A DNA stretch of 64,000 bases, taken from positions 137,332,429 to 137,396,428 of the forward strand of contig NC_068983.1 of the NCBI RefSeq assembly GCF_001194135.2, given 5' to 3'. The translations under genes were made by a program, and so were the position numbers. The DNA comes from Octopus bimaculoides (taxonomy: Eukaryota). The notes under the pieces were generated by a model that searched no databases, was not told the origin of the DNA, and saw only the letters and a list, made by a program, of their open reading frames with translations. Positions 4,601-56,930 of this stretch are shown here, piece after piece. The stretch's first letter is position 1. Each line of letters starts with the position of its first letter.

Positions 4601-4841
4601 ATGCCGGCTAACTGTATAGTGAAAGGCTGTCGCTCCATTCAGAAGAAAGGCGGGCCGATTAGCTTCTACCGACTACCATGGAAAAATGTCCGTTTAAGAA
4701 ATGAGTGGATACGACGCGCTGGTTATGATCCGAATAATTACGATGAAGTGAAGCACATTAGTCGTGACCATCGAGTATGCAGCAGGCATTTTTGGAACAA
4801 CCGCAAGGAAAGTCCTTATGATCTACCGACGTTTTATTTGG
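4601..4841 (+). CDS. THAP zinc-finger module A, putative first coding exon (80 codons + 1 nt, phase-1 donor)
   Basis: ATG 4601: MPANCIVKGC...W...VCSRHF...LPTFYLG carries the THAP C2CH signature with conserved W, F and P. Donor G|GTAAAG at 4841/4842; the unspliced frame stops 6 codons later. About 90% aa identical to module B. Confidence 0.9.
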
Positions 4842-7302: not shown

Positions 7303-7546
7303 ATGGGTCGAGCACGAAAATCATTCTCTGCTAAACAGAAGTTGAAAGTGATAGCCTATGCCGAAATACATGGGAACCGAGCTGCTGGTCGACAATTCAC
7401 TGTCGATGAGAAATCGGTCAGAGAATGGCGAAAGCAGAAAGATAAGCTCGAGAAACTGCCGAAAGTAAATACAGCTGATGATAACATGCAAGCAAAAGAA
7501 TGGCTGTGTGCTATGCAGAAATGCTGTTTATACATACCGAAATACG
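7303..7546 (+). CDS. Brinker-type HTH DNA-binding module A (pogo transposase N-terminus-like), putative first coding exon
   Basis: ATG 7303: MGRARKSFSAKQKLKVIAYAEIHGNRAAGRQFTVDEKSVREWRKQKDKL, the typical R.SY...FKL.V...A...GNR.AAR.F.V....VR.WRK pattern. The 3' boundary is uncertain: AAA|GTAAAT at 7464/7465 (phase 0) or ACG|GTACTT at 7546/7547 (phase 1); ORF stop at 7602. Confidence 0.75.
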
Positions 7547-13295: not shown

Positions 13296-13536
13296 ATGCC
13301 AACCAAATGTATAGTGAAAGGCTGTCGGTCCCTTCAGAAGAAAGGCGGACCGATTAGTTTCTACCGACTACCATGGAAAAATATCCATTTAAGAAATGAG
13401 TGGATGCGACGAGCTGGCTATGACCCAAATAATTACGAAGAAGTAAAGCATATAAGTCGTGACCATCGGGTGTGCAGCAGGCATTTCTGGAACAACCGTA
13501 AGGAAAGTCCTTATGATCTCCCAACGATTTACCTTG
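13296..13536 (+). CDS. THAP zinc-finger module B, putative first coding exon (phase-1 donor), paralog of module A
   Basis: ATG 13296, in-frame TAA at 13266 upstream. MPTKCIVKGC...VCSRHF...LPTIYLG. Donor G|GTAAAG at 13536/13537, exactly 240 nt after the ATG as in module A. Confidence 0.9.
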
Positions 13537-16197: not shown

Positions 16198-16378
16198 ATG
16201 GGTTTTAAACGAATGAAATATACTTCAAAATTTAAACTACAAGTCGTGATGCTGGCTCTGAAAACCAATAATTCTGAAGCCGGGAGACAATTTAGTGTTA
16301 ATGAAAAACTTGTTCGGGACTGGAGAAAAAAGGAAGCTGAACTCCGGAATATGCCACCGACAAAATGTTCTAATCGCG
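16198..16378 (+). CDS. Brinker-type HTH DNA-binding module B, putative first coding exon (phase-1 donor)
   Basis: MGFKRMKYTSKFKLQVVMLALKTNNSEAGRQFSVNEKLVRDWRKKEAELRNMPPTKCSNR. Donor CG|GTAAGA at 16378/16379, and a second strong phase-1 donor CAG|GTGAGT at 16429/16430. Confidence 0.85.
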
Positions 16379-17963: not shown

Positions 17964-18034
17964 ATGGTGAACTTCTGTGCTGTGTTTGGTTGTAGCAGTA
18001 AACACAAGACTGGAAGCGGCATTTCCTTCCACAG
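17964..18034 (+). CDS. THAP zinc-finger module C, exon 1
   Basis: MVNFCAVFGCSSKHKTGSGISFH(R), a classic THAP N-terminus. Donor CAG|GTAAGA in phase 2, matching the acceptor at 22845. Too short for the supplied ORF track. Confidence 0.85.
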
Positions 18035-22844: not shown

Positions 22845-23116
22845 ATTTCCTGATGTGCGTAAAAAGCCAGGTCTGTGGAAAAAATGGGTCCGTGCTCTTG
22901 CCCGTCAGAACTGGACTCCTAGCCATTACACCTACATATGCAGTCAACATTTTGAAAAATCTTGCTTCCAAATGATCAAGCCAGGGGGGCGGGCTTTACT
23001 TCAGAGATATGCCATTCCTACAATATTCAACAATGTACCCAAGGCACCTCAAAGTCATGATATTAAACATGAAAATCCATTGCTGCTTGCAACTAATTCT
23101 TATGAGAGAAACTCTT
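22845..23116 (+). CDS. THAP zinc-finger module C, exon 2 (ends in phase-1 donor)
   Basis: Long pyrimidine tract + TAG| at 22844/22845. AG|A restores Arg, then FPDVRKKPGLWKKWVRALARQNWTPSHYTYICSQHFEKSCF...LQRYAIPTIF (THAP W, CxxHF and AIPTIF box). Donor CTT|GTGAGT at 23116/23117. Confidence 0.88.
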
Positions 23117-30687: not shown

Positions 30688-31090
30688 ATCATCATTTAAT
30701 GTCTGCTTTTTATGCTGGCATGAGTTAGACACTTTGATTGGAACTGGTAAGGCAGAGAGCTGCAACAGGTTCCAGTCTTATTTTGGCTTGGTTTCTACAG
30801 CTGGATGCTCTTCCTAATGCTGACCACTCAGAGAGTGTAGTTGGTGCCTTTTACTGGCACAGGTGCTATTACGTGTCACCAACACCGGCCACAACTATAA
30901 TTTCACTTGGCTTGACGAGTCTTCTCAAGCACAGCAAATTGCCAATGGTCACAATCACTTGTCATTGCCTCGGAGAACCCACATTCAAAGATCTTGCTTC
31001 ACCTTCTCATCCTATGTCTTCCTGACTATGTATGATTGAATGCACAAATCCCTCTCGTGGGGATGATGTTTATCCATTGTTGTTAATGAT
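30688..31090 (-). mobile_element. SINE copy (reverse orientation relative to 1-376)
   Basis: CATCATCATCATTTAATGTC...TGCTGGCATGAGTTAGAC...GGCTGGATGCTCTTCCTAATGCTGACC. Confidence 0.7.
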
Positions 31091-32233: not shown

Positions 32234-32605
32234 NNNNNNNNNNNNNNNNNNNNNNNNNNNNNNNNNNNNNNNNNNNNNNNNNNNNNNNNNNNNNNNNNNN
32301 NNNNNNNNNNNNNNNNNNNNNNNNNNNNNNNNNNNNNNNNNNNNNNNNNNNNNNNNNNNNNNNNNNNNNNNNNNNNNNNNNNNNNNNNNNNNNNNNNNNN
32401 NNNNNNNNNNNNNNNNNNNNNNNNNNNNNNNNNNNNNNNNNNNNNNNNNNNNNNNNNNNNNNNNNNNNNNNNNNNNNNNNNNNNNNNNNNNNNNNNNNNN
32501 NNNNNNNNNNNNNNNNNNNNNNNNNNNNNNNNNNNNNNNNNNNNNNNNNNNNNNNNNNNNNNNNNNNNNNNNNNNNNNNNNNNNNNNNNNNNNNNNNNNN
32601 NNNNN
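32234..32605. other. Assembly gap (N run); other gaps at 1918-1957, 37259-37462 and 41512-41538
   Basis: Runs of n. Confidence 0.98.
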
Positions 32606-34595: not shown

Positions 34596-35028
34596 ATGCC
34601 ATCTAGTAAATCGAAATCTCATATGGTTGTTATACGTGCTGTAGATGAAGGTACCAAAAAAAAAAAAAAAACGAAAAAGTATTTCGGTATCCCACCAATG
34701 ACATAAAAAATTATGAAAGATCGCGCTCGTACTTTGTCTGACTATGCCTCATAGCAACGCTAGCGAGATCATCATCATCGTTTAACGTCGTCCTTTCATG
34801 TTGGCATGGGTTGGACGGTTAGAGGTGCAATTTATAAAGATGTCGGAAAGACCATTTAGAAATGGGTCCTACAGCTTCGCCGTCAGGGAGTACAACTAAA
34901 TTCTACTGAAATCAAAAATTAAACTGTACAAGTAACGCAGTCTTGGTTGTAGTAGATTTTGCGTTTGAATAATTGATATGAGCTCTTTCTGGCTAGATAC
35001 AGGCAACAGTTTTCATGGGCTTGACAAC
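34596..35028 (+). pseudogene. Decayed paralog of the Psq/CENP-B HTH module at 42189
   Basis: Aligns by eye with 42189-42630 (e.g. AAATGGGTCCTACAGCTTCG.CGTCAGGGAGTACAA). Contains deletions, stops, an expanded A-run and a ~55-bp SINE-tail insertion (~34768-34822). Flanks are also homologous (34331 vs 41809; 35160 vs 42776). A GTGAGA donor remnant remains at 35029. Confidence 0.85.
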
Positions 35029-37258: not shown

Positions 37259-38899
37259 NNNNNNNNNNNNNNNNNNNNNNNNNNNNNNNNNNNNNNNNNN
37301 NNNNNNNNNNNNNNNNNNNNNNNNNNNNNNNNNNNNNNNNNNNNNNNNNNNNNNNNNNNNNNNNNNNNNNNNNNNNNNNNNNNNNNNNNNNNNNNNNNNN
37401 NNNNNNNNNNNNNNNNNNNNNNNNNNNNNNNNNNNNNNNNNNNNNNNNNNNNNNNNNNNNNNGATGGTACAATGAAATAAAGTATTGAATGTCTTATTGA
37501 ATAGATGAAATATTGAGTTCAATATAAAGGATTAAATATATAAAGGCGAATACGTATTTTCTATACCTTGTGGTATTTCATCATGGCCGGTATGACAGAC
37601 TTTAACAGACTGTAATAGATTGGCTGGTTTTCTGTCTTTTATACCAATTCCTTTGGACAGCAGCAGTATGTGTTTGGCTATTTTTAGAATTGATGCCAAA
37701 TTTATTTTTAGAAATGATGACATTTGAGAAATTGTTTTGTGTTTTGGTTGTAGGGATAAGATTTTTAAACCCCAGTAGGTGTTTGGCTGTTCTAAGAAAT
37801 GATGACATTTGAGAAATTGTTTTGTTTTGGTTGTAGGGATATATAGATCGATGTATGGCCAAGAGGGAGAGAGAGTTGACTGAAATTTTTTTATTCACTT
37901 TTTGTAGTGAGTGACTGACAGAGAAAAGGAGAGAGAAGTTATGTATGTATGGCTTCAGTGACACACACACACAGAGACGGCGCGCCAACTTCAAAAGAAC
38001 TTCCTCGATCCAATCGCGATCTCTCTGTCTCTCGCTTTTACGCCGACTTGAAAAGATACCCTCCCCACCCCACATATTTTTAAAAAATTTTAAACTCTAC
38101 GGAAAGCGACGATGTTATTCACAAACATAAACAAAAACACGTGCACCATAGTTTGACAGCTACGGTACTCATACCGTAATTTAGCCAACTGTAAACTTAA
38201 CTTGACTAGTGTTTGTGGGTTCTTCTATAGATCAAAGTATTCACATAAATATGTAGTCATTTTAATTTTTAACCATAGCTTAAAACTACTTTCATTTTGG
38301 TGATCTAGTAGTGATGATATTTGTGATGTCTTTTACTTCTATTCATAAATTATCTTGACGTGTTGTTTTCTTTGTTGTTTCGTATTTCATCTAAATAAAA
38401 CTTGGTAGTAATAATAATTTCCAATTTAGGAATAATGGAAGCTTACAATTTCTGCTTTATGCTGTTTACACAATGAAATATAAGTTTTATAAGTTCATTA
38501 TTTTCTGTTCTATTAAGGATGAGAATTGATGATTTGGATGTATTGCCTGTCAAATAATTTGGTCTGGATAGCTTTTGCCTTTATATTTGTCCTTATCTTG
38601 CTTATGATAGAGAAACAAAATCCAATGTTTATCATATTGTTCCTCAGCATCACTGAACCTAGACTGTTTGTTAGTGTGTGTAAAAATATTGAAGATAATA
38701 TGATCTTCAATGAACATAACCCTAACTTTCAGAATCTGATCAGTAAGGAGTTGTAAAATTTGTGTTTAATGAAAAAGAAAATTTACAAATGACATTGTAT
38801 ACATAAGAGATAAAAGATACTAATTTTTCACGTCAAACTTGTATTTGGGAAAATTTTGCCAAGTACGGGAGGTGGGGGTGAAAGGTTTTTTTTTTTTAA

Positions 38900-40250
38900 A
38901 TTTGTTTATGTAGAAGATACTTGCTCAAGGGCTGAGGAGTGAAAGTGAGTTTCATACCACAGGGTCAGGAAACAAGATTCTTAAACATACACATGAATAC
39001 CTCTTTGGCATATCCAAAAAGTTATATTCTTACCAGTGACATTTTGTTCCATTGTACTTGTATGCTGAATTTGAGTTATAAGGAGCATATAGCCATTTCC
39101 TATTTTAAAATTTAAATTTTTGTAGTGGGTTTCCTGAAACTTCTAGTTAATTTAGAAACTCTTTTTGGATAGTTGATCATTCAATTTTGAATCAAGTACT
39201 GTTTCAAATGATTTGTAGCAGTGGTTCTTAGTAGAAGCTACTGCAAAAACTGTGTTGATGCCATCAGCTGCAACTGTTCTTTAGAACTAATATTACTCTT
39301 TCTGTGATTCTGATAGTTTTTCAGAAAGATTTGAGTAGACATTCCTTTTGGTTTGTGAGCAGATGATAGTGTTGTACTTACTGTTCCCATATTAATTCTT
39401 CCTCTTCATTTGGTTTGAATTTTCTATTGTCCTGTTGCAGTGACTTGTTTACAGATTGGCCAAATAACTGATAAGCAAATAAATTGTCTTTTGAATTGGC
39501 AGATAAGTGTAATTTCATTACATTTCCCCAAAGATATGAGGACTTAAGCAAATGTTCATCTGCTCTTGTCTCTCCTAAAACAACAGCCCATATCTGTCTG
39601 AAATCTCCAACAAAAAAGCAAGGATTTCCCCATTATCTTTTTGTTTATACATTGCCCTGTCCACTACTTCTAATATGACTTTATGAAACTTTGTGTGTTC
39701 ATTCCAAATTATGAATTTGCAACTTCTTAGAACCTCTATTATCTCAGTTCCTTTGCTGATACTTTCCATAGCACTTTCATTTATTACCAAGTTGAAAGCA
39801 TGCGCCGCCTTCTTTCTAGGTACATCAAGGAGAAATAGTTTACATTTCTGGAATTAAACTTTTAAGATAATTGTTAATTATGCTGTTATGATCAGGTAGC
39901 AGTTTTGTAATTTCAACTTGATTCTGAAGTTCTTATGTTATTGTCCCACACAGAATTTATTATGACACTTGTCAATGTGATTCCATTCAACATGAGGAAA
40001 GCAAAACCTTGGAACCTACTTTCCTTCCTTAAACAATACTTTGTGTTTAATGCCAATAAGTACTGAGTTGCAAATGGTTTTATTGTAGCAACCCATTATA
40101 ATTGAATTTAAGCTTGATGCTTGGAGTCTTGACAGATCTGTAATTTTTCTACAATGCAAGTGACTGCTTGGGAAACCTAGGTGCTGTGAGCATCTTTCAT
40201 TTATATTAGCGCAACAAATTGGTAGCCATTGGAGCATCAGATAGAATGCT
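38900..40250 (-). mobile_element. Degraded Helitron (PIF1-like helicase) fragment
   Basis: Minus strand: GGAHAFNL (GGRTAHS.FKL-like), ISKGTEIIEVLRSCKFIIWNEHTKFHKVILEVVDR (Helitron LIIWDE.TM.HK..LEA.DR) and an NGT remnant; many stops. Confidence 0.8.
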
Positions 40251-41060: not shown

Positions 41061-42188
41061 ATGTATTGTAAAAAAAAATTTGTTTATTGTTCAACCCTAA
41101 TTCGTCTTTAAAAACGAGTAGATTTAATTTAAAGGCAAGTAGGGCGTAAACCACTCTCATCCTATTTGTGAGAGACTGTAGTGTATATGTGAGTTGACAT
41201 TTGGCTGCTATTTGTAATAAGGTTAAACTATGGTTCTTTTATGGGGTAATAATAACTGTAATATCCATAGGTATTAAATAAAGCGTTTGTGTGAAACCAG
41301 AATTTCATAACAAATTCAAACATGTATCTTGTTAGATGCAAGAAAAGAACCAAGAAAAAAAAAGCTCCTTGCTGGATCTGTACTTCGATATCATATACTG
41401 GTCCTCAGTTTTTGCTCTGTTGTAAAGTTTCTTAAGAGGTTATAATCTAATTTAAGGAATCAGATGCTACCCCCAGTGTGTTGTGTGTAACTCTCTCTTT
41501 CTCTCTAGATCNNNNNNNNNNNNNNNNNNNNNNNNNNNTATATATATATGTCTATATTCACACATATACATATATTTTAATTAATTCTATTATAACATTT
41601 TATCAATCTTAAGATTCCTTTCTGAAGAAATCGAGGTTTTGTTTGATTTATGGTCATAAATCTTTCTATTAATCAATGTCCCCCACCTCCTTTGAAATTG
41701 TTTAAACTTTTTTTTTCGAGACATCGTGTAAGACTAACGTAACACACATCCATTCACAATCAGTAATGAGGAAAATCATTAAAATTTAAAATAATCGTAA
41801 ATCCTACATTCCACCGTTCAATTTAACAAAATTCGAGCACTTTAAATACTATCATAACTTCACTTTATCCTTACTCCACCTCCGGTATTTCTGTTATTTA
41901 TTATTGTTATTATTAAATGAAAACTTTAGTAATTTAGTTCATTGAGTCAGGTTTATTTAACTAAAATCTATGCAGCTGCAATACATTGGTTTGTTTAGAC
42001 GATTACTACTAGAGAGCTCAAGTGCTGCTAGAGGCCACATAGTGCAGTAAATCTTTCAGTAGTAATTCTCTAACTCTAAGGCCAATCATTGCAGGCAGTG
42101 AACGAAGTGAGTGTGACTTCATTCTAAATATAACGTAGTAAAAGTGAGTAGAGTGAGAAGCGATAAGTAGACTGCAGCTTTAAAAAAA

Positions 42189-42630
42189 ATGACTTCTGCT
42201 ATCAATAAATCGAAGCCTTATGGTTGCAAACGCAAAGGTTTGCTACTCAAGACAAAAGTGGCTATAATACGTGCCGTAGACGAAGGCACAAAAAAGAAAA
42301 AAATTATCGCCCGCGAATTCGGTATCCCAGCGACAACATTATCAACTATTATGAAAAACCGCGCGCGTATTTTGGAAGATTTCACAGACAATGGCTCGTC
42401 GCAACGCAAGCGAATTAGAAGTACAATTTATAGAGATGTCGAACAGGCCATATACAAATGGGTCCTACAGCTTCGTCGTCAGGGAGTACAATTAAATGCC
42501 ACCAAAATCAAGCGTAAAGCTGTTGAAGTAGCACACAGTCTTGGTTACAATGAATTTTGCTTCCGTAATAATTGGTATGAACGCTTCCAAGCTAGATACG
42601 GATTCAATTTTCAGACGCCGAACCAAAAAG
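42189..42630 (+). CDS. Psq-type HTH + CENP-B-type HTH module (Tigger/pogo transposase DNA-binding region), putative first coding exon (phase-1 donor)
   Basis: KRKGLLLKTKVAIIRAVDEGTKKKKIIAREFGIPATTLSTIMKNR (HTH 1), RKRIR...YRDVEQAIYKWVLQLRRQG...IKRKAVEVA...F...NNWYERFQARYG (CENP-B HTH). No DDE domain follows. Donor AAG|GTGAGT at 42630/42631; stop 5 codons later if unspliced. Confidence 0.92.
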
Positions 42631-44094: not shown

Positions 44095-44430
44095 TAAAGT
44101 TCTGTATAAAAATGGACCATGCCTTCACTATATCTACAGCACCCTTCCCAATGTAAGCAGTGAAATGATAAGAGCTGAAGTATTTAATGTCTCAAATCAG
44201 AAAATTGATGAAAGGTGGCTACTCAGTAAATTCAATGAATTGCATTGAAGCAACAGCATGGAAATCATTTCTAATAGTTATAAATGACTTTCTGAGCATC
44301 AAGAAAGCAGCTAACTATACCGAAATAGTCAATAACATGATGGACAATTTTCAAAAGTTGGGAGCAAATATGAGCATAAAACTGCACTGTCTCCACAGTC
44401 ACCTTGATAAATTCCTTGAAAATCTTGGTA
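44095..44430 (+). mobile_element. Degraded Chapaev/CMC-type transposase C-terminal fragment
   Basis: SQIRKLMK...EATAWKSFLIVINDFL..KKAANYTEIVNNMMDNFQKLGANMSIKLHCLHSHLDKFLENLG matches the GPQIR.LM...AW.SF..V...FLG..KA.NY..LV...GCNMSLK.HFLHSHLD.FPENLG pattern; frameshift near 44187. Confidence 0.75.
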
Positions 44431-44719
44431 ACCCATCAGAACATAAAATCAATGGAACAAATGTATCAAAGCCGATGGGACTTATCTATGTTGCTGGAAC
44501 TTGGCTCATGGTCTTCTTGAGATTCAGCACTCAAGAAAATCATCCAAATGCAAATTCATGAGAAATTAAACATAAGCAATGATGTAATTTCTCTGTAGAA
44601 ATTTTAGGGAAACATTCAGGTTTTTGAAGAAAAACCAATTTCTTTGTATGTTATGCCTATTCCTCATCAATTGTTTTATTGAAAAAAAAAAATTCTATGG
44701 ATCCAGTCTGTATACTCTT

Positions 44720-45056: not shown

Positions 45057-47441
45057 TATCTTAAAATTTTGATGTGATGGTAATTATCATTTTCAGATTC
45101 TGTGTATCAAAAAACTTTTAATTTAGGTTCATATTTATTGACAACAGAGTAAAAAAAATTGTTTGGTCTGTGTAATTATTAATTTCATGATCATTAATAT
45201 TTATTATATTTAGAGTTATAGGATACTGATATCTATTTTTGCTTTATGCTGCAAAAAATAAATATTTTTACTAGCATTTTAAATGATAGCATATATGCAG
45301 TTTTTGATAGTTTCCTATTTTAATTCTTTGTGTGTACCTATGTATGTATACACACAAACCTTTTGGTTTCAACTGTGAAGGAAAAAATTAAACCTCTGTC
45401 CTTTGCATGCCTTCTGAAACTAACCAATAAGACAAGCAAAGTTAATGTTCTTAAATAATCTGCAAATCTGCTACTGTAGAGAAAGGAATTTCAATGGGGG
45501 AATATTCTGGGGATGAAAGGTCTGTGTGTAATGATTAGTGCAGGACTTTGTTGGTAGGAATAGATTGCTGATGAGAGGAAGAGTGATGAGTAAGTGAAGG
45601 TGGCAAGGAGTAAAAGCTGCTATTGTTAGAGAAGAAAGGCAGAAAGAGGAGACAGTGCGTCATTAGGCTAAAGTCTAGTATGTTGGTGAAAAATATGTCG
45701 TATGAGTTTGTTTTCACTATCTTCAACCCTTTGCTGTTGAAACATTTTAGATTTAGAATTAAAAGACTTTGTCTAAATGCCTACTTGCAAATGCATGTAG
45801 CTTATTACTGTAGCAGTTCTAAAACAAAAGCTAATTCCATCAAAATATACATGTGACAATTGAGTTGGAAATAATATATATGGAGAATTAAAAGAATTGA
45901 TTGATACTGAAAATATAACACTGTCTATCAATTCTTACAATTGTATTACTTGGAGTAGTTACTCACTATCCCAATTGCATTCCACTTTCAACAAAATCTC
46001 ATGGAAGCAGTTTCATGCGTCTTCCTTGCAGGAAGACTCATGAAACTGCATGCATTCTACCTTTGTGTTTGGAACACCATGTGATCCTTATCCATGCAAG
46101 TATATTTGAAATTGTACATACCTAATTCGTAATTTGCAAGATTTTCATTGATGCAAGTAGAAAGATGCATTCAACCTGACTGCTAACTCTTAAACGAAGC
46201 TGTTTCTCCAACTCCTTCAGGTTAGTTAAATTTTATTTATTTTATAACCTTCAATTTATATCTTTGTCATTTTTGGATTTCATGATAATTTTTGTAATAT
46301 AAAATATTTATTTTTATAATTTAATGTTTCAATTTTTTTCTTCTTCCAGACAAAAAGTTTCAGAAAACAAAGAATTACAGAAAACACAGAAATGAATTTA
46401 AATCAATCTAGTTATAGTGGGAAAGAGAAGGGTCATATTGCTTTGTAAATTAAAACAATTTGGAGAGATTTATGAGTAGATTTCACTGGCTGTTTTAAAC
46501 AGATTATCCTTCAAGTTTTGAAAGGCTGGAATGTAAATATATGGGAGATCCTTACTGCACTGAACAAAGTGGGGGGGTTTTTTTTTTTGGTGGTTTTTCT
46601 TTCTATTAAAATAATTGTTTGAATGGCAAAAATGTACATAATAAAATTTTGTATATAACAAATATTGTATCAATAAAGATTTAAACAATCATTTTCTTTA
46701 AAATATGATTAATTATATTTTTTTGTAACAATGACTGATGTTTATTTATTTTTTTTGTATGCATTTATTCTGCTTAAATCATTAACTGTTTTATCTTGTG
46801 TACTCTCCCTTCTTTCTAGAGAATGTAAATTTTTGGAAAAGAAAATAATGAAAATATTGTATATTAAGTATGTTTGGCAGTGTTGCTTGGCTGATGTGCT
46901 AGTGATCAAAATTTTTTAAAGTGTCAAACTATTATCTAACTAAAAGCAAACAATGATTTTTATATCCTAAAGTACACCATACAGCCTAACTTCTCACACA
47001 CAAGACTACAATAATTATTTTTATTTATGGTAAAATTATTTTGATATTTATTATTGGAAATTTTGCAGTAGCACAAAAACAACTGTCGGAAATGAAAAAA
47101 AAAATTTTGACTTTAATCAAAAACATGCATTGTAGAATATGAACTGGACATTGTATTGGTTCTTCCTTTTTTGTTAGGTTCTGCTTGCAATTTTAACTCC
47201 ACCTCTGGCAGTTGATTTAACAGTTTCTGTATCTTTGAAACAGATCATAGTTTTTATACTACTTTACTGATTCATGTATGCAGGCAGCCTACTAAACTGT
47301 TTATTCTTCTTACAACTCCTTATGTATCATATTCTCAGAAATGGAACTTCACCCTATTATTTATAATTACATGCATAAATGCAAGCTTGTCATTTTCCAC
47401 TGTTACCCATTTGGTGATAAAATAGTTTCTTTCTGTTTCAG

Positions 47442-47491
47442 GTGATACCCAGAATGTTCAAATATCAAAGCAGACCCACCGGTTCTCAACA
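47442..47491 (+). CDS. Small internal exon, candidate first constant exon
   Basis: Acceptor TTTCTTTCTGTTTCAG| and consensus donor |GTAAGT. 50 nt; entered in phase 1 it reads (G)DTQNVQISKQTHRFST and exits in phase 0. It is also open from phase 0. Confidence 0.55.
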
Positions 47492-50400
47492 GTAAGTCAG
47501 CGAACCTTTTTTTTTTTTTTTTCATTCTTGTTTAATCAAATCTTGTGTTATTTTATATGTTCCTATTTAAGCTTTCAAAAATGTTGGGTTTTTTGTTATT
47601 AACGATTAATATATTCTTTCATTAGTTTCAATCATTGCACCGTAGCTATCCTAGGGTGACACATTCAAGAGTGTCTGACAATTATATAGTACATACTCTG
47701 ATATTCATTTTGTTGATTGTCTAAGTTTACATATTTTTAGAGAAATAACAGTGATGTATGGAATGCTGTATGCAAAAAAATATAATTACTTGGAAAAAGA
47801 AAACAAAAACTTAATGGCACTTGTTAACATCTCTCAAAGAAAGAAGGGAGATAATTTCAAGACGTTAAAAATTAATATCTGAAAGATTAACACTTACACA
47901 TGTCAGGCTTTCACATAGTATCTGTTTAGGAAATTTCACTCAGGATATTGGTCAATGAGACATGCTTTCTCAAAAGAGCACACCCTAAATTATGTGGCTG
48001 CAAAGTGAACTTACTAACTATGTAACCATGTCTTTTCTCATGTGTAACATGGAGTTTGTTTCCCTTAAATTTGTGTTTTTAAAACATCTATAAATAAATA
48101 AACAAATTTGCATGTAATTATATATAATAGCAGTAACTCTGGAAATACTACAGTTTTGAAAACATTCAGATTGTTGCAAATTTATAGAGTACCATAAAAT
48201 ACATAATGTTGGAGGTGGGGCATTTGATTCTTTAGATGGAGTTATATTCACACAAAACTATCATATTTAGCAGTTTATAATATGTCCCAATAAATCAGCC
48301 TGCATTTTATAAACATATGGTCATGGTTTGGGTTACTGCACTAAAGTACCCTATGAAATGAACTATAAACATCTTCCTTATAACTGTTTTCCAGTTATTA
48401 GTGTTTCCTAATGTAACAGTGTATAACAATAGTACTTACTTCATAGAGATTACATTAGTCAAGAGATCAAAGTGACAAGACTTGATCATACATTTAAACA
48501 AACTCACAGTCAGTTATGTGTCAAATGTGACATCATACACTAGTCCTATCATATTTCATTAGTTTGATACCAGCAGTTATTTAGTTAATTATATAATACA
48601 ATATTGATCAATAATTCATTTTATGTGATTATATTTAAACAAAAACTACGTTGTAATTTTCACTTGTATTTGTATAATTGGAGTGATCTTGAACTTTTGT
48701 TTTGTGTGAAACCCCACAATATGAACCAATCTAAATTCATGATTATTTTAGAATTTAAATAAAATATTTATGATGTGTATTTTAATTCAAAATGCAGTAT
48801 TAAAAGGCCTTGTGGGTTTTTTAATGGAAAAATAGTGAGATTTCATAAAGATCTGAATATATTAAACTTGAAAATGATTTGATAATGGGGGACTACAAAT
48901 ATCAGGTGTAAATAGTTACCAAAATAAAGCTTGTTCACCTTGAAAGCTATCAAATATGGCATATTACTTACTATACACTTGTCAATATCTTCACTCTAAG
49001 CAGTTAACACAATCTAGAAAGAATTACTTAAATATCAGCAAACAAATGAGTGAACTTTTCTCTACCTTTCTATTCTAACTTATTAAAAAAGAAAGAATAT
49101 GTCTATGACAAATGCTTTAAATAATCCAAATTATGAAACAAAATCAAAGATACTGTCTATAATATTATTCTGCTGTACTACAACCTAATTTTCATGTGAG
49201 AGAAAGATGCATATGGCAAACCCACAATATTAGCTCCATAGCTTATCAGTCAATTGTCTTGTGAATACTAAGATTAAAGGTTATAGAAACTGCAACAATC
49301 ATATTACAAGTGTGTTAAATGGTTAAAATTTACAAAAGTAAATCTAGCTATAAATATCGGAGTTTCATAGATGCAGTTTCCACATTAATTAACTCTTTGT
49401 ATTGGTAAAACTCTAGCACTGAGTTATGATCAAGTAATTCCTAATTCTTGGAGCTAACATTAGATAGGTTTTCTAATGTGAATTATTACATGAAGTGAAT
49501 TTGCTAACCATTTCACAATTGAATATGTACAGAGAGAGTTTTTACCTCTTAATCTGACAATATCTGAAGGGCAGTTATGAACCAAAGCTTTTACAGGTGT
49601 TAACTTTTTAAATTATTGTATTTAACTTTTACTGGATTGTAGAATTGGTGTCAAACTCAGAGTGGAAATGTGTACACAGTAGCCTTGCTACATATAAGGA
49701 CCAAATGCTGAGCACTGTCTGCATATGACGTAGATTTATGAAATACATTAGAATATTTTAATAATTCTTCTTTCTTTAAATGTATGACAAAATCAGTGTA
49801 TTGAAGTATTATATTAAAGTAAGCAACTCCCTCAAGATGAAATAATACTCTAACCAACATGGTTCATTATTTTGATAGTGGCTAGTGTTACAGCAGACAC
49901 TATATTTTGATTGTAAAGTTAAAGATAATTTTGGGGCCCAACAACTTAGATAATTTTGTAACATTTATGGGCACATGTCAGACTATAAAATAAATCTCAA
50001 ACTATATCTAGGCTTCATTCATACTTATGTAAGGTAATATGAAACCAGTATAGCATATCCTGCCCCAGGAAATTTTTCAATACATTGTCTGCAATATTGT
50101 AAGCAATTGCCATTGATAAAATGGAACTTATTGTTTCCATTGTACAATGTAATATGGTATATTGTTTCATATATATTTTTTCTAATTGAAACAAAGTCAT
50201 AGATTTGGACAGGATAGTTAATTAAATCAATGCTAATACGTACCTGCCATTATTTAATTGAGACAGTAAGGATGAAGAGTAAAGTTGATTCTAGTGAGAT
50301 TTTATTTCAGAAATACAGGAATGTATAAAATCCTGTACCTTAGATATTTATGACATTTAATTACTCTGGGTGGTTCCAATATTGCTATGTTCCAGTAGTA

Positions 50401-51899
50401 ATACAGTTGAAATCTATTCCATGTGAGATATGTATTTACAAAAATACAGTCTTTCTGTAATTGAAAAGGTGCGTAACCTAATATATAATGTCAACCTGGA
50501 ATTTTTCTATCAAGGTCATACTTTGACCCTGAGAACATTATTTTTTACAATTGTGATTCCACTTCATGAATTATAAGAATGAGTAATGATGTTTCTATCA
50601 TATATATTATGTTACTACTCAGTTCATTTGCTTTTGCTGCTGGTTGTGAGGAGGTTTTATTGTCCATTTTATTTTTATTCCTTTTTACCTTATTTATTCT
50701 TCTAAGTTAACGAAGTTTGTTGAAATATTCACTATGCACACATACATATGTTGGATACCCTAGTCCTTCCAGTAATGGGAATGACACTGGAAAGTTTATC
50801 TTCATATAATTTTACCTGGGAGCAAAATTCATTCCTCTTAAAGTTATACCCGTCATAGGAATTCTCTGCTGCTGTGTAAGTAGATAGTTGTGATGCATTA
50901 CAGGGAAATGGAATGTGCTATGAAAAGTGGACCATTTGTGGTTCTTGTATTTATCACAAAGCCTTGAACTTTTGATCTCTTCATGGAAAAATCCATTATT
51001 TATATTCTTGTTCAGAAATTTATATTGGTGATAAAATCATTCTACATTTGTTTATTATATTATATTTTATAATTATAGATACTTTTGTTTTCAATTTATG
51101 GAACAATGATGTCATTGTTTAACAAAATTTCCAACAATTTAATCATTGAGTGGTTCACTGCATTTCTAATTAACAAGAGTGACATGGGATCATATGTAAT
51201 TTAGAGGACTTTGTTTGAAGAGCACTGGATTTTCACCTGTGTTTACACTCTGTGCTGACATATGGCAAAAGATATCAACATAATCATGGCATCTTCTGTA
51301 TAGTTTCTCTCAACCAACTTCTACTCACAAGATATTAATCAACCCAAAGTTAGGGTACAAGATACCCAAGGTGCCATGCAAAGCAGACTTCTTAATTGCA
51401 AGGCTATACCTGCACCTGTAATCTATTTATTCATGGGCTTTGTTATTAGTGCTGCAGTGATAACAACTTTGTAAATTTAAGTTTGCAATCTATCTTATCT
51501 TCCATTTGCAAGCACTTTGCATTACTAAATTGTTTTAAGGGAAGTATAAACAGCGCAAGTTAACATTCTACATCCTATGAAATATGAAGCTATACAATAC
51601 AGAGTATATTGGAACTGGAGGTCAGATGCTACAGGATAAAAATTCCAAAGTCAAGAAATATTCAGTATTACATTTGTTCAATTATAGTCAATTTGTCTTA
51701 CTGACAAGTAAAGAAAAATTAAAATATTGAGCATTTATTTCTTGTCTAGATACTTGGATTGGTTTTGGGCAAAATACCATATTTTGAAGTATATATTATG
51801 TAAAAAGAGTATTATAATGGCTAAGGAGGAGGGGTGAACAATTATAAATCACTAAGTATTTTTCCAGTTATATGTCATCACTAAAAATCTATTAATGTA

Positions 51900-52190
51900 T
51901 GGACGCAGGCATGGCCTAGTTGTTACGTAGAGCAGTCGTAAGGTCCCAAATTCAATCTCACTTCCTGACATCTTCGGCAAATGTTTCATTGTAAGTGAAA
52001 TTGGGTAGACGGAAACTGTATGGAAGCCGGTCTGATGCACTCTATTATTTCAAGAGCTATCTTTATCACACTGTTGCGCTGATTCTTCTTGAGAACTACG
52101 TCAAAGGTACACGTGTCTGTGGACTCCTCGGTAACTTACACGCTATTCAATGAATAAGTAGTTCAGTTGATCGAACCACAGAAATTGTTG
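51900..52190 (+). mobile_element. Diverged SINE head plus repeat body shared with 61875-62030
   Basis: GGCATGGCCTAGTTGTTA... tRNA-like head; GAGAACTA.GT.A.GGGTAC.C.TGTCTGTGGA shared with ~61955-61990. Confidence 0.55.
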
Positions 52191-53049
52191 AAAATAATGG
52201 AGATCTATTTACTTAGTTATATAGTTGCAGCAGACTAAATATTTTATTTATATATCATTGTCATCACTCATTCGTCAATACCGAGAATAGAACAGATTTT
52301 TCATTTTGTTAAACTCTTCCTAGAGGTTAACTGATAATCTACAGATTTTCATCCTATATAAATCACCTTCACGTTATTTTTCATTGATTCAATGTTCGCA
52401 CTAGCACCCCGTCGTTCATATTCTTTTTCTTACCTGGTTTGCTTGTGAAGTAAATAGTTGAATTTAATGAGAAACGGGGGAGCGAACTCGTGACCTAATC
52501 AGTGATTTGCACATGTACTGCATTAAACAAATAGTAAGCGCCTCCCCATTAACCCAGTACGATTGAATTCCAACCTTGATGAATGTTCCCCCAGTCAACT
52601 GTTTGTGACAAGGAGTAGGAATAATGTATGCACAATTGTTGGCACCTAATGATTCCTGCACATATCATTGGCCTGTTATCGTCCCAATACCCCTGTATGA
52701 TCTACTGCTAACTAATTAAGTGTCGTTAACTACGCTTGTTCTAAGATTCATTTTCCTCCTTCCGATTGACAAAATATAATTCGTGTTATCAATACAAATT
52801 GGGTTTCGGCCACTTTCTCAACCTTAACATCACACTTGCTACTATCGTTTAAAATATCTTCATTTTCTCATCTATAATTTTTTTTTTTCCTTTCCATAGT
52901 TTCCAGTTTGCTTTTCATAACTTCCAAGATAGTTATAAATTACATTATATTACCGTAGCTATAGCTCTTACACTTTTTCTTCCTAATTTATTTCTCAGTT
53001 GCACACTAACACTCTTGATATTCTGTCTTTTTGACTGAGGAGAAAACAC

Positions 53050-53480
53050 CAACTCACCGACTCACTATATTTTTTATAATAAAAATCCTGAATTAATTTT
53101 CTCATTAAATTCGTCAGTCAACAAATAGATTTCTTTCTACCTCGTATGTTTTTCCACGGACGACTGGCGTTTTCTCAGCTTCTCTCTCTCTCATTCATTC
53201 ATTCATTCTCTCACTAGTTCCTTCTCATTCATTCATTCATTCTCTATCTTCGCTCGCTGTCACTCACTCTCTCAGCAGGCAGTATGGCGGGAGATGTCTG
53301 TGCCATTTACCGCATGCTCACTTCTCCTAACAACTATCATAAAAGCAGACTGTCGTTCCTACCTTCGGCAGTTGGAATAACTGTTCGGACAACAATAACA
53401 GTTTCAAACAATTAATGGAATACAGTGAACCGTGCCAGCACCTGCTTGAAACAATAAGCTTATTTTCGCCATAAGCTAAT
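53050..53480. promoter_or_regulatory. CpG-enriched, CT/ATTC-repeat-rich putative promoter or first-exon region
   Basis: Local CpG enrichment, (CT)n/(ATTC)n tract, ATGGCG motifs on both strands (53285 +, ~53470 -), donor-like GTGAGT motifs on the minus strand near 53053-53066. Direction cannot be determined. Confidence 0.3.
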
Positions 53481-54872
53481 CTTTCTCTATCGTGTATCAC
53501 TCTCCTTTTTAATATAGATGTGTTATGAGCTAAAATGTATTTGCTCGTAAAGCTGTAGCTCCGTGTATGTATTTATATATTTCACTGCTTCTATATAAGG
53601 ATGAGAAAAACGATGAGAAAGGTACTTAAACAAGGACCAAATTTTCGTAAATGAAATATCAGTTAAACATGCTCTAAGGAATGGAATGTATTTGGAAATA
53701 GAGTTGTTCTTACTATCAATACCGTTATTGGAATAAAATCACACTGCTGACTACAGGTGCATTTTATCTCCCTCATTCATCTCTTCTTTCCCTGTTTGTA
53801 ATGGAATTTACTGTTATTCGCTGTCTTTTGGGAAACATTCAACATAATCCGCTTATTTAAAAAGAAAAGGAATCACTTCTGTGATGCTGCTATCCCACTT
53901 TGATCATTGGAAAATTCCGGAAACCCTACTGAAGTACTTTCTCCCTGCAAATCTATATCATGTGGTTTGTAGCAGATTATTTTTTTTAATTTTAGTCAAA
54001 AGCCACTTTGGACGATGAAGTTAATAGAATCCTCTCTTTTCTTGTATTCTTCCCACATTCTTTTTCTTCTAGAAAATAGCTGAAAACAAACAATATATTG
54101 TACACATGCATTTGGATTTTTACATCGACATAACACATTTCTCTTTTTTCATATGACGAAAATATTCAATGTTCTGTTGAAAGTGATTGAGAGGATGCTT
54201 TCCAGGAATTACTGACCAAATTGATGGCGACATTTCCTTCTGTGCAATTTTATTGGAACAAAAGAAAATTACTTTCACTGAAACCGGAGATCGATTTTAA
54301 TCCCCGAGCGGAATGTTTTTGCTTGCGTTTATTTCTAATACCACACTTTAATAATTGTCTCTAGCATTATGTATTAATATTACAGCTCATTGATATATAC
54401 ATATAATACATTTAAAATCATTTTATTATCGATAAGAAGTTGAATCGATATATTTTGAAAAAGTCAAAGATAAAAGGAATACGCTGTCATTTGTTGAAAT
54501 GAATGAATAGAATAAATCGAGGTCTAATTTCGAACATTGCTTATATACATTCATCTTGAACTTTTAGTTTTTGTTCACTGAAATTATATCTTAATCCGAA
54601 ATTTCAGAGTATTTTGTTTCATTTACTTTTTTTTTTTTTAATAAATGTAACTTCTGTTTACCATAAAAAATATTGTAATTTGGGTTTATGAAAAAGAGAC
54701 CGAGAGAAATAAGTGCCTGTAGGTTTGACTATTATATTTCAAGTGAAGCGTACTACCTTATCCATTAAAGCAAAACAGTGACTGATGCGTTATTGTCGTT
54801 AAATCAGCTGTCATAAGCTTTTTGTGGGAAATGTATCCTTTTATGTTACTTGTTGTGTGACTGTAACTTTAG

Positions 54873-55829
54873 AGCCGTCCGAAACTGGATCAAGAGCAGC
54901 CGTGTAGCCACTCTTCTCTGGAAGAGGAGGGGAAAGATGACCTGCAAGGTACGGCGTCTGCCCTGGAAGATTTGGCATTGTGGGAGGAACAGCAACAAGA
55001 TGCCGTTTCTGCTTTTGGAGAGGAAACCCCAAACTGGTCGTTACAACAGGAGACCAGTGAGTCCCTACTTGAGGGTGATATCGAACGGCTGAGCAGTGGA
55101 CATCATGGGAGTGCCTCACACCTAGCAGAGCTAGAAAGGTGGGCTAGCCAACATAGCACTCCATCTCATAAACCACTCAACAGGTGGACAACTAGTCAAT
55201 TGCATGATGTAGCTTCCAGCTTGGACCGTGATCTCGAAAAATGGGCGAAAATTAATCAATCTTTCTATTCAGGTGTAGATAAATGGAAAGGTCTGAACAC
55301 GGATGTATCTGGTCTGGATAAAAATATTCAAAAATTGATGTGTAAGCGTCCCACTGCTATACTGAACAAAGAACGAATTCTTCATAAATGGCCAGTACCC
55401 TATCATGATATTTCAGTGAGTTTGGATAGAGACCTTGAAAAATGGGAGATCCAGCAGCGAGAGAACGCTGCTAGCTTGGAGAGGGATTTAGAGAAATGGG
55501 TTGGTCAATGTCAGCAGAGTGCTTTAAATAGGGAAACGGATTTAGAAAAGTGGGTGTCCCTTCATCGTAAAAGGACGTCGCACTTAGAAAAGGAAATAGA
55601 TGAATGGGTGGACAAACGGCGAAACAGCATACATCTGTTGGAGCAAGAAGTGAATGATAGCAATTACAGACGTCACAGCAGTGTCTCTCTTCTGGGGAGA
55701 GAACTAAAAAAGCTACCACATTCCCCGCACAAAGGACACAGAGAATCAACAGGTGCTGTGGCTACCTTACCGCGAAGGAATTTGAAAAGGGTCATGCAGA
55801 AAAGACACTTTAAAGAAACATCGGTATGA
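54873..55829 (+). CDS. Large terminal coding exon encoding a degenerate 18-aa repeat (xxLERDLEKW) protein of unknown function
   Basis: The supplied ORF 54972-55829 starts at TTG and extends in frame to an acceptor (CTGTAACTTTAG|AGC, phase 0), giving SRPKLDQEQ...KETSV*. About 318 open codons in AT-rich DNA, with strong 18-residue periodicity. AATAAA at 56132-56137. Confidence 0.8.
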   Translation, partial: SRPKLDQEQPCSHSSLEEEGKDDLQGTASALEDLALWEEQQQDAVSAFGEETPNWSLQQETSESLLEGDIERLSSGHHGSASHLAELERWASQHSTPSHKPLNRWTTSQLHDVASSLDRDLEKWAKINQSFYSGVDKWKGLNTDVSGLDKNIQKLMCKRPTAILNKERILHKWPVPYHDISVSLDRDLEKWEIQQRENAASLERDLEKWVGQCQQSALNRETDLEKWVSLHRKRTSHLEKEIDEWVDKRRNSIHLLEQEVNDSNYRRHSSVSLLGRELKKLPHSPHKGHRESTGAVATLPRRNLKRVMQKRHFKETSV

Positions 55830-56899
55830 TGTAGAATGACTGCTTAGTTTTTATTCAAATTTGTTCTTGTTCTTTTTTCCCCTCTCTATTGACATTTGTT
55901 TGGATATGTTTATAAAAAAAACAATGCAAAACAACAAAAGCGAAAACGAAAAAGGGTGCATGTTTTTCCTCTCTTTTTTCAACTTTCATTCACCGAATTT
56001 TTTTTTTTTTTTTTTTTTTTTTTTGCTATTTGATATATTTACTGTTGTTAAAGTTACCCTGTTACGATCGATTTTTTTTTTTAATATGAAGGCAGTGAAA
56101 GCGGCAGAAATGGTAGAACGCGTCACGATTGAATAAATGCTTTACAGTATATGATGTCATTGTTCTAGATTCTAAGTTCAAATCCTGGCAAGGTTGAATT
56201 TTGCATTTCGTCTCTCTGGAATCGATAAAGTAACACATGAATTACGGTTGGTTACCCGCTGCATTTGTGGACTTGTTCCAGTGCAAAAAGTAACATTGTT
56301 TATAAACGAATTCTCAGTGTTCACGATTACCATCCAGAGATGGTAATAGAATGTAGACCAAAATATTTATCTATACATTCACCAGTTTTATTTACGTGGT
56401 TACTAGATCTTCTAAAAACAGTAGTCAGATTTCTTTATGCTCCACTGCAATGGAAGGACACCACATCAGATAATTGTAGTCTTGGATATTCTCTTTCCAC
56501 AAAAAAAAAAGAAAGAAAAAGGCAGTGATTATTTCTTTATTTATACTAGCTAAAGGCTTTCAAGCCTTTAAGCTAGTAAATAAGGAAATAATATCGATTT
56601 TTATAGTCTATAAAGGTTGGGGTGGGGTTAAACTGTATAGGATGTCATGTCTAAAGAAAATTTGATATTAGATCAGATTTCCCCTTCCCCCATAAATTAA
56701 AGTCTTGCAAAATAGTGAATTACCCTTCTTTTTGCATATACCTTATCATTTGCATTGTAAACTTTGCACAGCCTCTTTCCTTCATACTTTTTCCTGCAGA
56801 CAATCATTTAGTTAAATGGGAGTTATAATACAGTTTTCTTTGAAATCATCTTCAGATGATGGTATGTTATATAGCACAGATACGCCCTATATTTATGTA

Positions 56900-56930
56900 G
56901 TGTGTATATATATATTATATATATTATTTG

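What the first reader, a model, noticed from the sequence alone, without database searches (positions are those of the whole stretch)
47442..55829. Phase-compatible candidate constant region downstream of the last variable module
Seen: a 50-nt exon with textbook signals (47442-47491) converts phase 1 to phase 0, and the large terminal exon begins in phase 0 at 54873. Any phase-1 variable exon could therefore read DBD-G-DTQNVQISKQTHRFST-SRPKLDQEQ...ETSV* without a frameshift. Inference only: the CpG-rich region at ~53.1-53.5 kb could instead be the promoter of an independent gene owning the 54873 exon, and the 47442 exon is also open from phase 0.
Basis: partly seen in the sequence, partly recalled or inferred. 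Interest (0 to 1): 0.72.

Follow-up and report, generated by a model that had tools for sequence, protein, structure and literature searches.

The report
Shared mini-exon and unannotated orphan exon
The 50-base exon is the already-annotated common splice target of the alternative DNA-binding first exons of an octopus BTB transcription-factor gene, but the big "terminal exon" behind it is in no annotated product: it is a conserved, unannotated protein-coding exon lying in the next intron.

Summary
The window is part of Octopus bimaculoides LOC106877732, a 195-kb gene with at least 36 RefSeq isoforms. The coordinates, splice signals and phase arithmetic all check out.

Joining each of the six in-window variable first exons (THAP x3, Brinker-like x2, CENP-B/Tc5) to 47442-47491 reproduces six RefSeq proteins exactly.

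The other half is not supported. In all 16 fetched annotated proteins that contain the mini-exon peptide, it is followed by HFVGGNGPTRDHP..., then a linker and a BTB domain. Those exons lie beyond the window. None continues into 54873. No public protein contains the 54873 ORF, apart from one gene call on a related octopus's genomic contig.

The ORF is nevertheless real coding sequence:
- dN/dS is 0.14 against that relative.
- It carries an in-frame indel, and its acceptor, stop codon and AATAAA are conserved.
- It has no Met in its first 154 codons, so it needs an upstream phase-0 exon.

Most likely (about 0.45, inferred) it is an alternative last exon spliced from 47491, giving BTB-less isoforms with a helical tail ending in ETSV. 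The main rival (about 0.3) is a small nested gene driven from the conserved, CpG-undepleted block at about 53.3 kb.

The parts
4601..4841 (+). Variable first exon THAP1. It has its own ATG and ends in phase 1 (G|GTAAAG).
   Evidence: Pfam THAP, E=6.5e-11. Spliced to 47442 it equals RefSeq isoform X20, XP_014782209.1 (P0067), exactly.
7303..7546 (+). Variable first exon Brk1 (Brinker/psq-like HTH), ending in phase 1 (G|GTACTT).
   Evidence: Pfam BrkDBD. Exact match to isoform X19, XP_014782208.1 (P0064).
13296..13536 (+). Variable first exon THAP2, 90% identical to THAP1. An in-frame TAA lies upstream with no AG in between, so it can only be a first coding exon.
   Evidence: Exact match to isoform X21, XP_014782210.1 (P0060).
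16198..16378 (+). Variable first exon Brk2, ending in phase 1 (G|GTAAGA).
   Evidence: Pfam BrkDBD, E=2e-11. The predicted Brk2-mini-exon-BTB protein is in the collection as isoform X27, XP_014782217.1.
17964..18034 (+). THAP3 exon a (MVNFCAVFGCSSKHKTGSGISFHR), ending in phase 2.
   Evidence: tblastn of P0004 and P0056. Donor CAG|GTAAGA.
22845..23116 (+). THAP3 exon b. It enters in phase 2 and leaves in phase 1 (T|GTGAGT). The split codon becomes TGT (Cys) with the mini-exon.
   Evidence: Pfam THAP. Exact match to isoform X11, XP_014782200.1 (P0056).
42189..42630 (+). Variable first exon CENP-B_N + HTH_Tc5, the last variable module in the window, ending in phase 1 (G|GTGAGT).
   Evidence: Pfam E=5e-13 and 2e-12. 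Exact match to isoform X10, XP_014782199.1 (P0077).
47442..47491 (+). 50-nt mini-exon and first shared (constant) exon. It accepts phase 1 and leaves in phase 0, encoding (G/C)DTQNVQISKQTHRFST.
   Evidence: Present in 16 of the fetched annotated proteins, always followed by HFVGG.... Matches Argonauta hians at 13 of 18 aligned residues, including the split codon.
52800..53600 (.). CpG-undepleted region (o/e 0.7-1.0 against a window median of 0.27). It is possibly an unmethylated promoter or regulatory element.
   Evidence: It has no copies elsewhere in the window.
53275..53480 (.). Strongly conserved non-coding block. It differs at 5 of 203 sites from the related octopus, against 11% divergence in the flanks.
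   Evidence: P=4e-6. No Rfam match and no significant RNA fold.
53613..53621 (+). Weak candidate for the end of an independent first exon: ATG AGA AAG|GTACTT, phase 0. The ATG and donor are conserved in L001.
   Evidence: Such candidates occur at about 2 per kb by chance, so this is not evidence on its own.
54873..55829 (+). Unannotated coding terminal exon: 318 codons plus TGA. It starts in phase 0, has no Met before codon 155, and ends KETSV*. It carries 18-residue W-repeats and a long predicted helix.
   Evidence: dN/dS 0.136 against L001, and 0.166 for codons 1-154 (P=1.7e-5). In-frame 3-nt indel; conserved TTTAG acceptor and stop. AlphaFold2 and repeat analysis.
55830..56155 (+). Probable 3' UTR, with an AATAAA at 56132-56137.
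   Evidence: The AATAAA is conserved in L001. The UTR is 89% identical to L001.

Best explanation
SHOWN. The window lies inside Octopus bimaculoides LOC106877732, a 195-kb gene. The gene is built like a clustered-protocadherin or UGT1A locus. It has many alternative first exons, each with its own ATG and each encoding a transposase-type DNA-binding domain (THAP, Brinker/psq-like HTH, CENP-B_N+Tc5). All of them end one base into a codon.

These first exons have a donor but no acceptor, so each splices to the first common acceptor, 47442. That 50-nt exon restores phase 0 and joins the real constant region (HFVGGNGPTRDHP..., a linker, a BTB domain and a Ser-rich tail). The constant region lies beyond the window's 3' end.

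The ORF at 54873-55829 sits in the intron that follows the mini-exon. It is a genuine protein-coding terminal exon under purifying selection. It has a conserved acceptor, stop and poly(A) signal, but no start codon of its own for 154 codons. It is missing from every public annotation searched.

INFERRED (about 0.45). It is an alternative last exon of the same gene, used through intronic polyadenylation. The mini-exon donor at 47491 (phase 0) occasionally pairs with the weak acceptor at 54873 instead of the distant HFVGG acceptor.

Each upstream DNA-binding first exon would then also be made as a BTB-less protein. That protein would be DBD, then G-DTQNVQISKQTHRFST, then an acidic stretch, 18-residue L..DLEKW helical repeats with a roughly 100-residue helix, a basic tail, and a class-I PDZ-type C-terminus ETSV. 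The helical region would replace BTB as the self-association module. These isoforms could be competitors or differently localised partners of the BTB forms.
For: Gene identity and the DBD-to-47442 junction:
- Six exact matches to RefSeq isoforms.
- At least 36 isoforms share one constant region.
- Argonauta has the same junction.
- The gene range is 195 kb.

The ORF is coding:
- dN/dS is 0.136 overall and 0.166 in the Met-less first 154 codons (P=1.7e-5).
- dS of 0.138 is close to the flank divergence.
- It has a 3-nt in-frame indel and no other gaps in 957 nt, while the flanks are full of indels.
- The AATAAA 303 nt after the stop is conserved.

The link to the host gene:
- Same strand as the host gene.
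- The only known upstream exon ending in phase 0 is 47442-47491.
- Direct DBD-to-54873 splicing is out of frame.
- The acceptor is weak: matrix score -3.2, against +5.7 and +7.2 for the two annotated acceptors. That fits an exon that is usually skipped.
- The NCBI annotation has no nested gene there.

Tail architecture: AlphaFold2 gives a confident helix over residues about 180-270. Tryptophans fall exactly every 18 residues.
Against: - No annotated isoform in O. bimaculoides, O. sinensis, O. vulgaris or A. hians uses the exon, although RefSeq lists at least 36 isoforms. The six predicted products are not in the collection.
- The phase fit is cheap. The chance of the right length class and an open frame together is about 0.12.
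- A CpG-undepleted, strongly conserved block lies 1.4 kb upstream and could be the exon's own promoter.
- Only one comparison species was available, about 11% diverged, and only for 53205-56910. The mini-exon-to-ORF junction is therefore untested.
Confidence: 0.45

Rival explanations
1. Independent nested gene. A promoter in the CpG-undepleted, conserved block at about 53.0-53.5 kb drives a short first exon, for example ...ATG AGA AAG|GTACTT at 53613-53621. That exon splices in phase 0 to 54873 and gives a protein of about 321 aa that never contains a DBD. LOC106877732 transcripts simply splice over it.
For: - CpG o/e is 0.7-1.0 against a background of 0.27, similar to the islands at the verified variable-exon promoters.
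- The block differs at 5 of 203 sites, against 11% flank divergence.
- The nearest acceptor downstream of that block is 54873.
- An ATG plus a phase-0 GTACTT donor is conserved in the related species. GTACTT is also the donor hexamer of the annotated Brk1 exon.
Against: - No such gene or protein is annotated. The 321-aa and 163-aa predicted products are absent from the collection.
- ATG-plus-donor candidates of that quality occur about twice per kb by chance.
- The block holds several upstream ATGs and has no CCAAT box. Every verified variable-exon promoter has at least one.
- The TATA-like TATATAAG near 53.59 kb is not conserved.
Confidence: 0.3
2. The 54873 exon is fed by some other unannotated exon ending in phase 0. 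This could be a further first exon in 47.5-53.2 kb, or one upstream of the window. Under this reading the exon belongs neither to the mini-exon isoforms nor to the 53.3-kb block.
For: - This intron is where the gene keeps further first exons. Isoforms such as X13, X16, X29, X30 and X32 enter at HFVGG in phase 0 from exons that lie outside the window.
- Eleven ATG/phase-0-donor candidates exist in 47.5-53.2 kb.
Against: None of the candidates has any support. No comparative sequence was available for 47.5-53.2 kb. No known variable exon maps there.
Confidence: 0.12
3. One reading: 47442 plus 54873 is THE constant region, and the DBD exons normally end in ...ETSV*.
For: Phase arithmetic only.
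Against: All 16 annotated proteins with the mini-exon continue into HFVGG... and the BTB domain. The BTB constant region is shared by at least 36 isoforms and by the orthologues in three other octopods.
Confidence: 0.03
4. The ORF is not expressed. It is a chance open frame, a recently dead exon or a transposon remnant.
For: It has no annotation and no homologue beyond one close relative. It has no Pfam or PDB sequence match.
Against: - It has 318 open codons in a 33% G+C sequence, where the other two frames have 17 and 26 stops.
- dN/dS is 0.14, with P=6e-9 against neutrality.
- It is single-copy: no other copy in the window and none in 15 billion proteins. That argues against a transposon.
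Confidence: 0.07

Closest known systems
Clustered protocadherin (Pcdh-alpha/gamma) and UGT1A loci: variable first exons spliced to shared constant exons (own knowledge)
   Same: There is a tandem array of alternative first exons. Each has its own start codon and 5' splice site but no 3' splice site. All join one common acceptor in one phase. The upstream regions look like separate promoters (CpG-undepleted, CCAAT).
   Different: The variable part is a DNA-binding domain of transposase origin, not an extracellular or substrate-binding domain. There are three tiers of entry into the constant region: at LKTQNQ..., at the mini-exon/HFVGG, and at AGPSNQ.... Promoter use was not measured here.
Drosophila lola, mod(mdg4) and fruitless: BTB transcription factors that diversify their DNA-binding domain by alternative exons (own knowledge)
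   Same: One BTB oligomerisation module is combined with many alternative DNA-binding domains from a single locus. FLYWCH, the mod(mdg4) domain type, is among the octopus variable exons (isoform X9).
   Different: The layout is mirrored. In the flies BTB is the 5' constant part and the DBDs are alternative 3' exons, trans-spliced in mod(mdg4). Here the DBDs are alternative 5' exons and BTB is the 3' constant part.
Host-transposase fusion genes / transposon-derived transcription factors (Cosby et al. 2021, own knowledge; PMC10027918, read)
   Same: THAP, CENP-B/Tc5 and Brinker/psq-type DBDs are joined by splicing to a host domain. The Brk exons are 58-66% identical to pogo-like proteins that still carry a DDE_1 domain. 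PMC10027918 notes that Octopus THAP and CENPB factors mostly carry BTB/POZ.
   Different: That paper counts them as separate genes and treats BTB as transposon-derived. Here they are isoforms of one 195-kb locus.
Alternative last exons produced by intronic polyadenylation (own knowledge)
   Same: For 54873-55829: an in-frame acceptor inside an intron of a same-strand gene, its own stop codon and AATAAA, and a weak acceptor.
   Different: No transcript evidence was available, so use of this exon by the host gene is an inference.
THAP proteins with a C-terminal coiled coil (e.g. THAP1, THAP11) and class-I PDZ ligands such as the ETSV end of Vangl2 (recalled from memory; a lead, not a test)
   Same: The predicted short isoform would be an N-terminal THAP (or other) DBD, a long helical region, and a C-terminal -T-S-V.
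   Different: There is no sequence similarity to those proteins. The tail has no homologue outside Octopus.

Membership tests
Variable-first-exon / constant-exon locus (Pcdh/UGT1A type) | Several tandem exons, each beginning with its own start codon | tested here: met
   Six modules begin with ATG, and the RefSeq proteins start at exactly those Met residues. THAP2 has an in-frame TAA upstream with no AG in between.
Variable-first-exon / constant-exon locus (Pcdh/UGT1A type) | All variable exons splice to one common acceptor, in one phase | tested here: met
   All six end in phase 1 and join 47442. Six exact RefSeq matches.
Variable-first-exon / constant-exon locus (Pcdh/UGT1A type) | Each variable exon has its own promoter | not testable with these tools
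   Indirect evidence only. CpG o/e is 0.9-1.4 upstream of four of the six modules, against a background of 0.27. CCAAT/ATTGG occurs at about twice the window density. No transcription start data were available.
BTB transcription factor with alternative DBDs (lola / mod(mdg4) type) | A constant BTB domain shared by isoforms that differ in their DBD | tested here: met
   Precomputed Pfam PF00651 (BTB) occurs together with THAP, FLYWCH or CENP-B_N/HTH_Tc5 in isoforms of one gene.
BTB transcription factor with alternative DBDs (lola / mod(mdg4) type) | BTB encoded by 5' constant exons and DBDs by alternative 3' exons | tested here: not met
   The order is reversed. The DBDs are N-terminal first exons and BTB lies about 200 residues downstream. 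So the locus works like this family but is not a member.
Alternative last exon of LOC106877732 (for 54873-55829) | Acceptor in frame with an upstream exon of the host gene | tested here: met
   47491 ends in phase 0 and 54873 starts in phase 0. The spliced products have a single terminal stop.
Alternative last exon of LOC106877732 (for 54873-55829) | Own stop codon and polyadenylation signal | tested here: met
   TGA at 55827-55829 and AATAAA at 56132, both conserved in L001.
Alternative last exon of LOC106877732 (for 54873-55829) | Transcripts joining the host exon to it | tested here: inconclusive
   No read data were available. No annotated or assembled protein carries the junction. Absence from annotation is not absence from the transcriptome.
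Protein-coding sequence (for 54873-55829) | Purifying selection on the reading frame between species | tested here: met
   dN/dS is 0.136 (P=6e-9). The only indel is in frame. The frame is open in both species.
Class-I PDZ-binding C-terminus | X-[S/T]-X-hydrophobic residue at the free C-terminus | tested here: met
   ...KETSV* in both species. Actual binding is not testable here.
Transposable-element protein (for 54873-55829) | Multiple copies, or homology to known TE proteins | tested here: not met
   Single copy in the window. One homologue among 5.8 and 1.84 billion sequences. No Pfam match.

The most novel reading that the evidence does not exclude
LOC106877732 has two alternative 'constant regions'. 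Every DBD first exon that enters through the mini-exon can be finished in one of two ways. One uses the BTB module. The other uses a lineage-specific, octopus-only helical-repeat tail ending in a PDZ-type ligand (54873-55829). The locus would then be a two-dimensional combinatorial system (DBD x effector). Its short forms could compete with the BTB forms on DNA, or tether a DNA-binding protein to PDZ scaffolds.
Probability: 0.4. Interest if true: 0.55.

Novelty: new member of a known kind. Interest (0 to 1): 0.35.

Why it matters
The mini-exon result adds no new biology, because it is already in RefSeq. I found no paper in the searchable library that describes this architecture.

The new element is a 318-codon, octopus-restricted coding exon under clear purifying selection that every annotation searched has missed.
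- If it is an alternative last exon, it roughly doubles the protein repertoire of the upstream half of the locus and provides BTB-less forms.
- If it is a nested gene, it is an unannotated orphan protein.

Either way it is a concrete correction to the octopus gene set, and cheap to test with existing RNA-seq.

Tried and rejected
- Pfam on the ORF: no family.
- PDB sequence search: nothing at E<=1.
- Exhaustive HMMER search against 1.84 billion representatives. It returned only the close relative and two long repeat proteins (25% and 19% identity, low-complexity matches). I judged those two spurious.
- AlphaFold2: mean pLDDT is 56, with one confident long helix. I did not run a fold search, because a single helix would give meaningless matches.
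- The conserved block 53275-53480 as an RNA gene: rejected. No Rfam hit at the gathering threshold or at E<=1, no tRNA, and fold z-scores of -0.5 and -1.2.
- The block as a coding first exon for 54873: no ATG inside it reaches a usable phase-0 donor (read directly). The ATG TAT TTG CTC|GTAAAG candidate just downstream of it, near 53.54 kb, is lost in the relative.
- Direct DBD-to-54873 splicing: out of frame.
- Reading the mini-exon from phase 0 into 54873: stops after 89 codons.
- Literature searches for the gene IDs, the SRA run and the architecture: nothing specific.

Full report
**1. What is in the sequence**

The window is AT-rich eukaryotic DNA (about 33% G+C) with four N gaps.

The 50-nt segment 47442-47491 is flanked by tttctttctgtttcAG and GTAAGT. 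Read with one base carried over from the previous exon, it encodes (G)DTQNVQISKQTHRFST and ends in phase 0. It is also open from phase 0.

The ORF at 54873 opens immediately after TAG, whose AG is the acceptor. It runs 318 codons to ...KETSV-TGA at 55827-55829.

The arithmetic of the finding is correct. Every in-window DBD exon ends one base into a codon. Direct splicing of a DBD exon to 54873 stops after 11 codons. Insertion of the 50-nt exon gives one continuous frame.

The signals alone are not compelling:
- A simple splice-site matrix finds 10 equally good acceptor/donor pairs on the + strand and 1 on the - strand.
- A random 50-mer is open in the needed frame 36% of the time.

**2. Identity of the locus**

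I searched the concatenated DBD exons against the protein database. This found an Argonauta hians protein, "LOC115209932 isoform X6" (THAP + BTB). Mapped back onto the window, it uses 17964-18035, then 22843-23115, then 47438-47491. It then continues HFVGGNGPTRDHP..., which is not in the window.

Searching that constant part returned Octopus bimaculoides LOC106877732 and its O. sinensis and O. vulgaris orthologues. The isoforms carry THAP, FLYWCH, CENP-B_N/HTH_Tc5, DUF3504 or no recognised domain in front of one BTB-containing constant region. At least 36 isoforms are named.

Splicing each of the six in-window modules in silico to 47442-47491, plus the annotated constant sequence, reproduces RefSeq proteins residue for residue:

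| Module | RefSeq isoform |
|---|---|
| THAP1 | X20 |
| THAP2 | X21 |
| Brk1 | X19 |
| Brk2 | X27 |
| THAP3 | X11 |
| CENP-B | X10 |

So the window is O. bimaculoides, and the mini-exon is the annotated shared acceptor exon. The gene spans 195 kb in GCA_001194135.2. Its neighbour is a CENP-B+BTB paralogue.

**3. The real constant region**

Sixteen fetched annotated proteins contain DTQNVQISKQTHRFST. In all sixteen the next residues are HFVGG. No HFVGG-coding sequence exists in the window, so that exon is more than 16.5 kb downstream of 47491.

Other isoforms enter the constant region elsewhere:
- Some enter one exon earlier, at LKTQNQINEEYDV, which is also outside the window.
- Some enter at HFVGG.
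- Some enter at AGPSNQ.

The locus therefore has tiers of alternative first exons.

**4. What 54873-55829 is**

Its only homologue among 5.8 billion clustered proteins and 1.84 billion representatives is a gene call on a 3.8-kb Logan contig from run SRR11869391. That contig, L001, is collinear with window 53205-56910 at about 89% identity. It is genomic DNA of a related octopus.

Evidence for coding, comparing the window with L001:
- The ORF is 96% identical with a single 3-nt in-frame indel. The flanks are 86-90% identical and full of indels.
- dN/dS is 0.136 (dS 0.138). For the first 154 codons, which contain no Met, it is 0.166 (P=1.7e-5).
- The TTTAG acceptor, the stop codon and an AATAAA at 56132 are conserved.

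It is therefore a translated terminal exon that must receive its start codon from an upstream exon ending in phase 0.

It is single-copy, so it is not a transposon. It has no Pfam or PDB relative. AlphaFold2 gives low overall confidence, but a confident helix over residues about 180-270. Tryptophans recur exactly every 18 residues in L(D/E)RDLEKW repeats. The N-terminal 80 residues are acidic and the last 38 are very basic.

No annotated protein of four octopod genomes contains it. The NCBI annotation shows no nested gene at that place.

**5. Who owns the exon**

Two readings remain.

(a) Alternative last exon of LOC106877732, spliced from 47491. This is the only known upstream exon on that strand that ends in phase 0. 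The acceptor is weak, as expected for an exon that is normally skipped. The product would be a DBD plus a long self-associating helix, which is a plausible transcription-factor format.

(b) A nested two-exon gene. The region 52.8-53.6 kb escapes the CpG depletion of the surrounding intron (o/e 0.7-1.0 against 0.27). It also holds a 200-nt block with 5 differences in 203 sites (P=4e-6). That block is not a recognisable RNA. A conserved ATG AGA AAG|GTACTT at 53613-53621 could supply the start in phase 0, but such candidates are frequent by chance.

Neither reading has transcript support, and neither predicted product is in any database. I put (a) at about 0.45, (b) at about 0.30, another unannotated partner exon at about 0.12, and non-expression at about 0.07.

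**6. Comparison with known systems**

The DBD-first-exon / common-acceptor logic works like the clustered protocadherin and UGT1A loci. Functionally it parallels Drosophila lola and mod(mdg4), but with the order reversed: DBD at the 5' variable end and BTB at the 3' constant end. It therefore fails that defining feature and is not a member of that family.

The DBDs are of transposase origin. The Brk exons are 58-66% identical to pogo-like proteins that retain a DDE_1 domain. This fits the host-transposase-fusion concept. One paper noted that octopus THAP and CENPB factors carry BTB, but treated them as separate genes (PMC10027918).

**7. Verdict**

The other half is unsupported as stated. It does point to a real, conserved, unannotated coding exon whose attachment is a simple question for existing RNA-seq.

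Interest is moderate-low (0.35). Nothing here is of a new kind.

Noticed in passing
window 34614-35012 (+): A decayed copy of the CENP-B_N/HTH_Tc5 variable exon. It is 47% identical to the 42189-42630 module and has several in-frame stops and an insertion. It is a dead variable exon left by tandem duplication, and it sits in a CpG-rich patch (34.4-34.8 kb).
   Followed up: partly
window 53275-53480: This block is the most conserved stretch in the 3.8 kb comparable with the related octopus (97.5% against 89% background). It lies inside a CpG-undepleted region and contains a fully conserved 43-codon ATG-initiated small ORF (53286-53417). No RNA family or stable fold was found. Its function is unexplained.
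   Followed up: partly
window, 400 nt upstream of 4601, 7303, 13296, 16198, 17964 and 42189: Each variable first exon is preceded by at least one CCAAT/ATTGG box: 11 in 2.4 kb, about twice the window density. Most sit in CpG-undepleted islands, while the introns are strongly CpG-depleted (median o/e 0.27). This suggests individually unmethylated promoters in a methylated gene body.
   Followed up: partly
window 7303-7546 and 16198-16378: The Brinker-like exons are 58-66% identical to pogo-type proteins from other data sets that still carry HTH_Tc5 and DDE_1 domains. So they look like fairly recent captures of a transposase N-terminus.
   Followed up: no
window 12237-12509 (+), and Argonauta protein P0005: An ORF (...RAPKSHFRNQLKTTLLRCSIDPNTWETIAKDRPKWQRV...) resembling the C-terminal tail of non-LTR retrotransposon ORF2 proteins (recalled from memory). 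The same motif sits inside the Argonauta 'hypothetical protein' P0005. That protein joins the Brk1 and Brk2 exons through intron and repeat sequence, so the model is probably chimeric.
   Followed up: no
window 39381-39853 (-): Two adjacent ORFs with motifs typical of Helitron/PIF1-type helicases (GDFRQ...), recognised by eye only. This is a transposon fragment in the intron.
   Followed up: no
window 1-351 (-) and 30738-31022 (+): Two copies of a short interspersed repeat. Their translations share ...LQLDALPNA(N/D)HSESVVGAF....
   Followed up: no
window 44172-44558 (+): A 129-codon ORF with ...MSIKLHCLHSHLDKFLENLG..., a motif I recall from transposase-derived proteins of many animals. It has no Pfam match.
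   Followed up: no
window 1918-1957, 32234-32605, 37259-37462, 41512-41538: Assembly gaps (runs of N, 643 bases in all). Exons hidden in them cannot be excluded.
   Followed up: yes
O. bimaculoides GCA_001194135.2, locus: The gene spans 195 kb. It contains one annotated nested gene (177 aa, Harbinger-type HTH_Tnp_4/DDE_Tnp_4) near its 5' end. It is followed by a paralogue encoding CENP-B_N + HTH_Tc5 + BTB. Many further BTB paralogues with consecutive gene IDs appear, so this looks like a tandem cluster of such multi-DBD loci.
   Followed up: no
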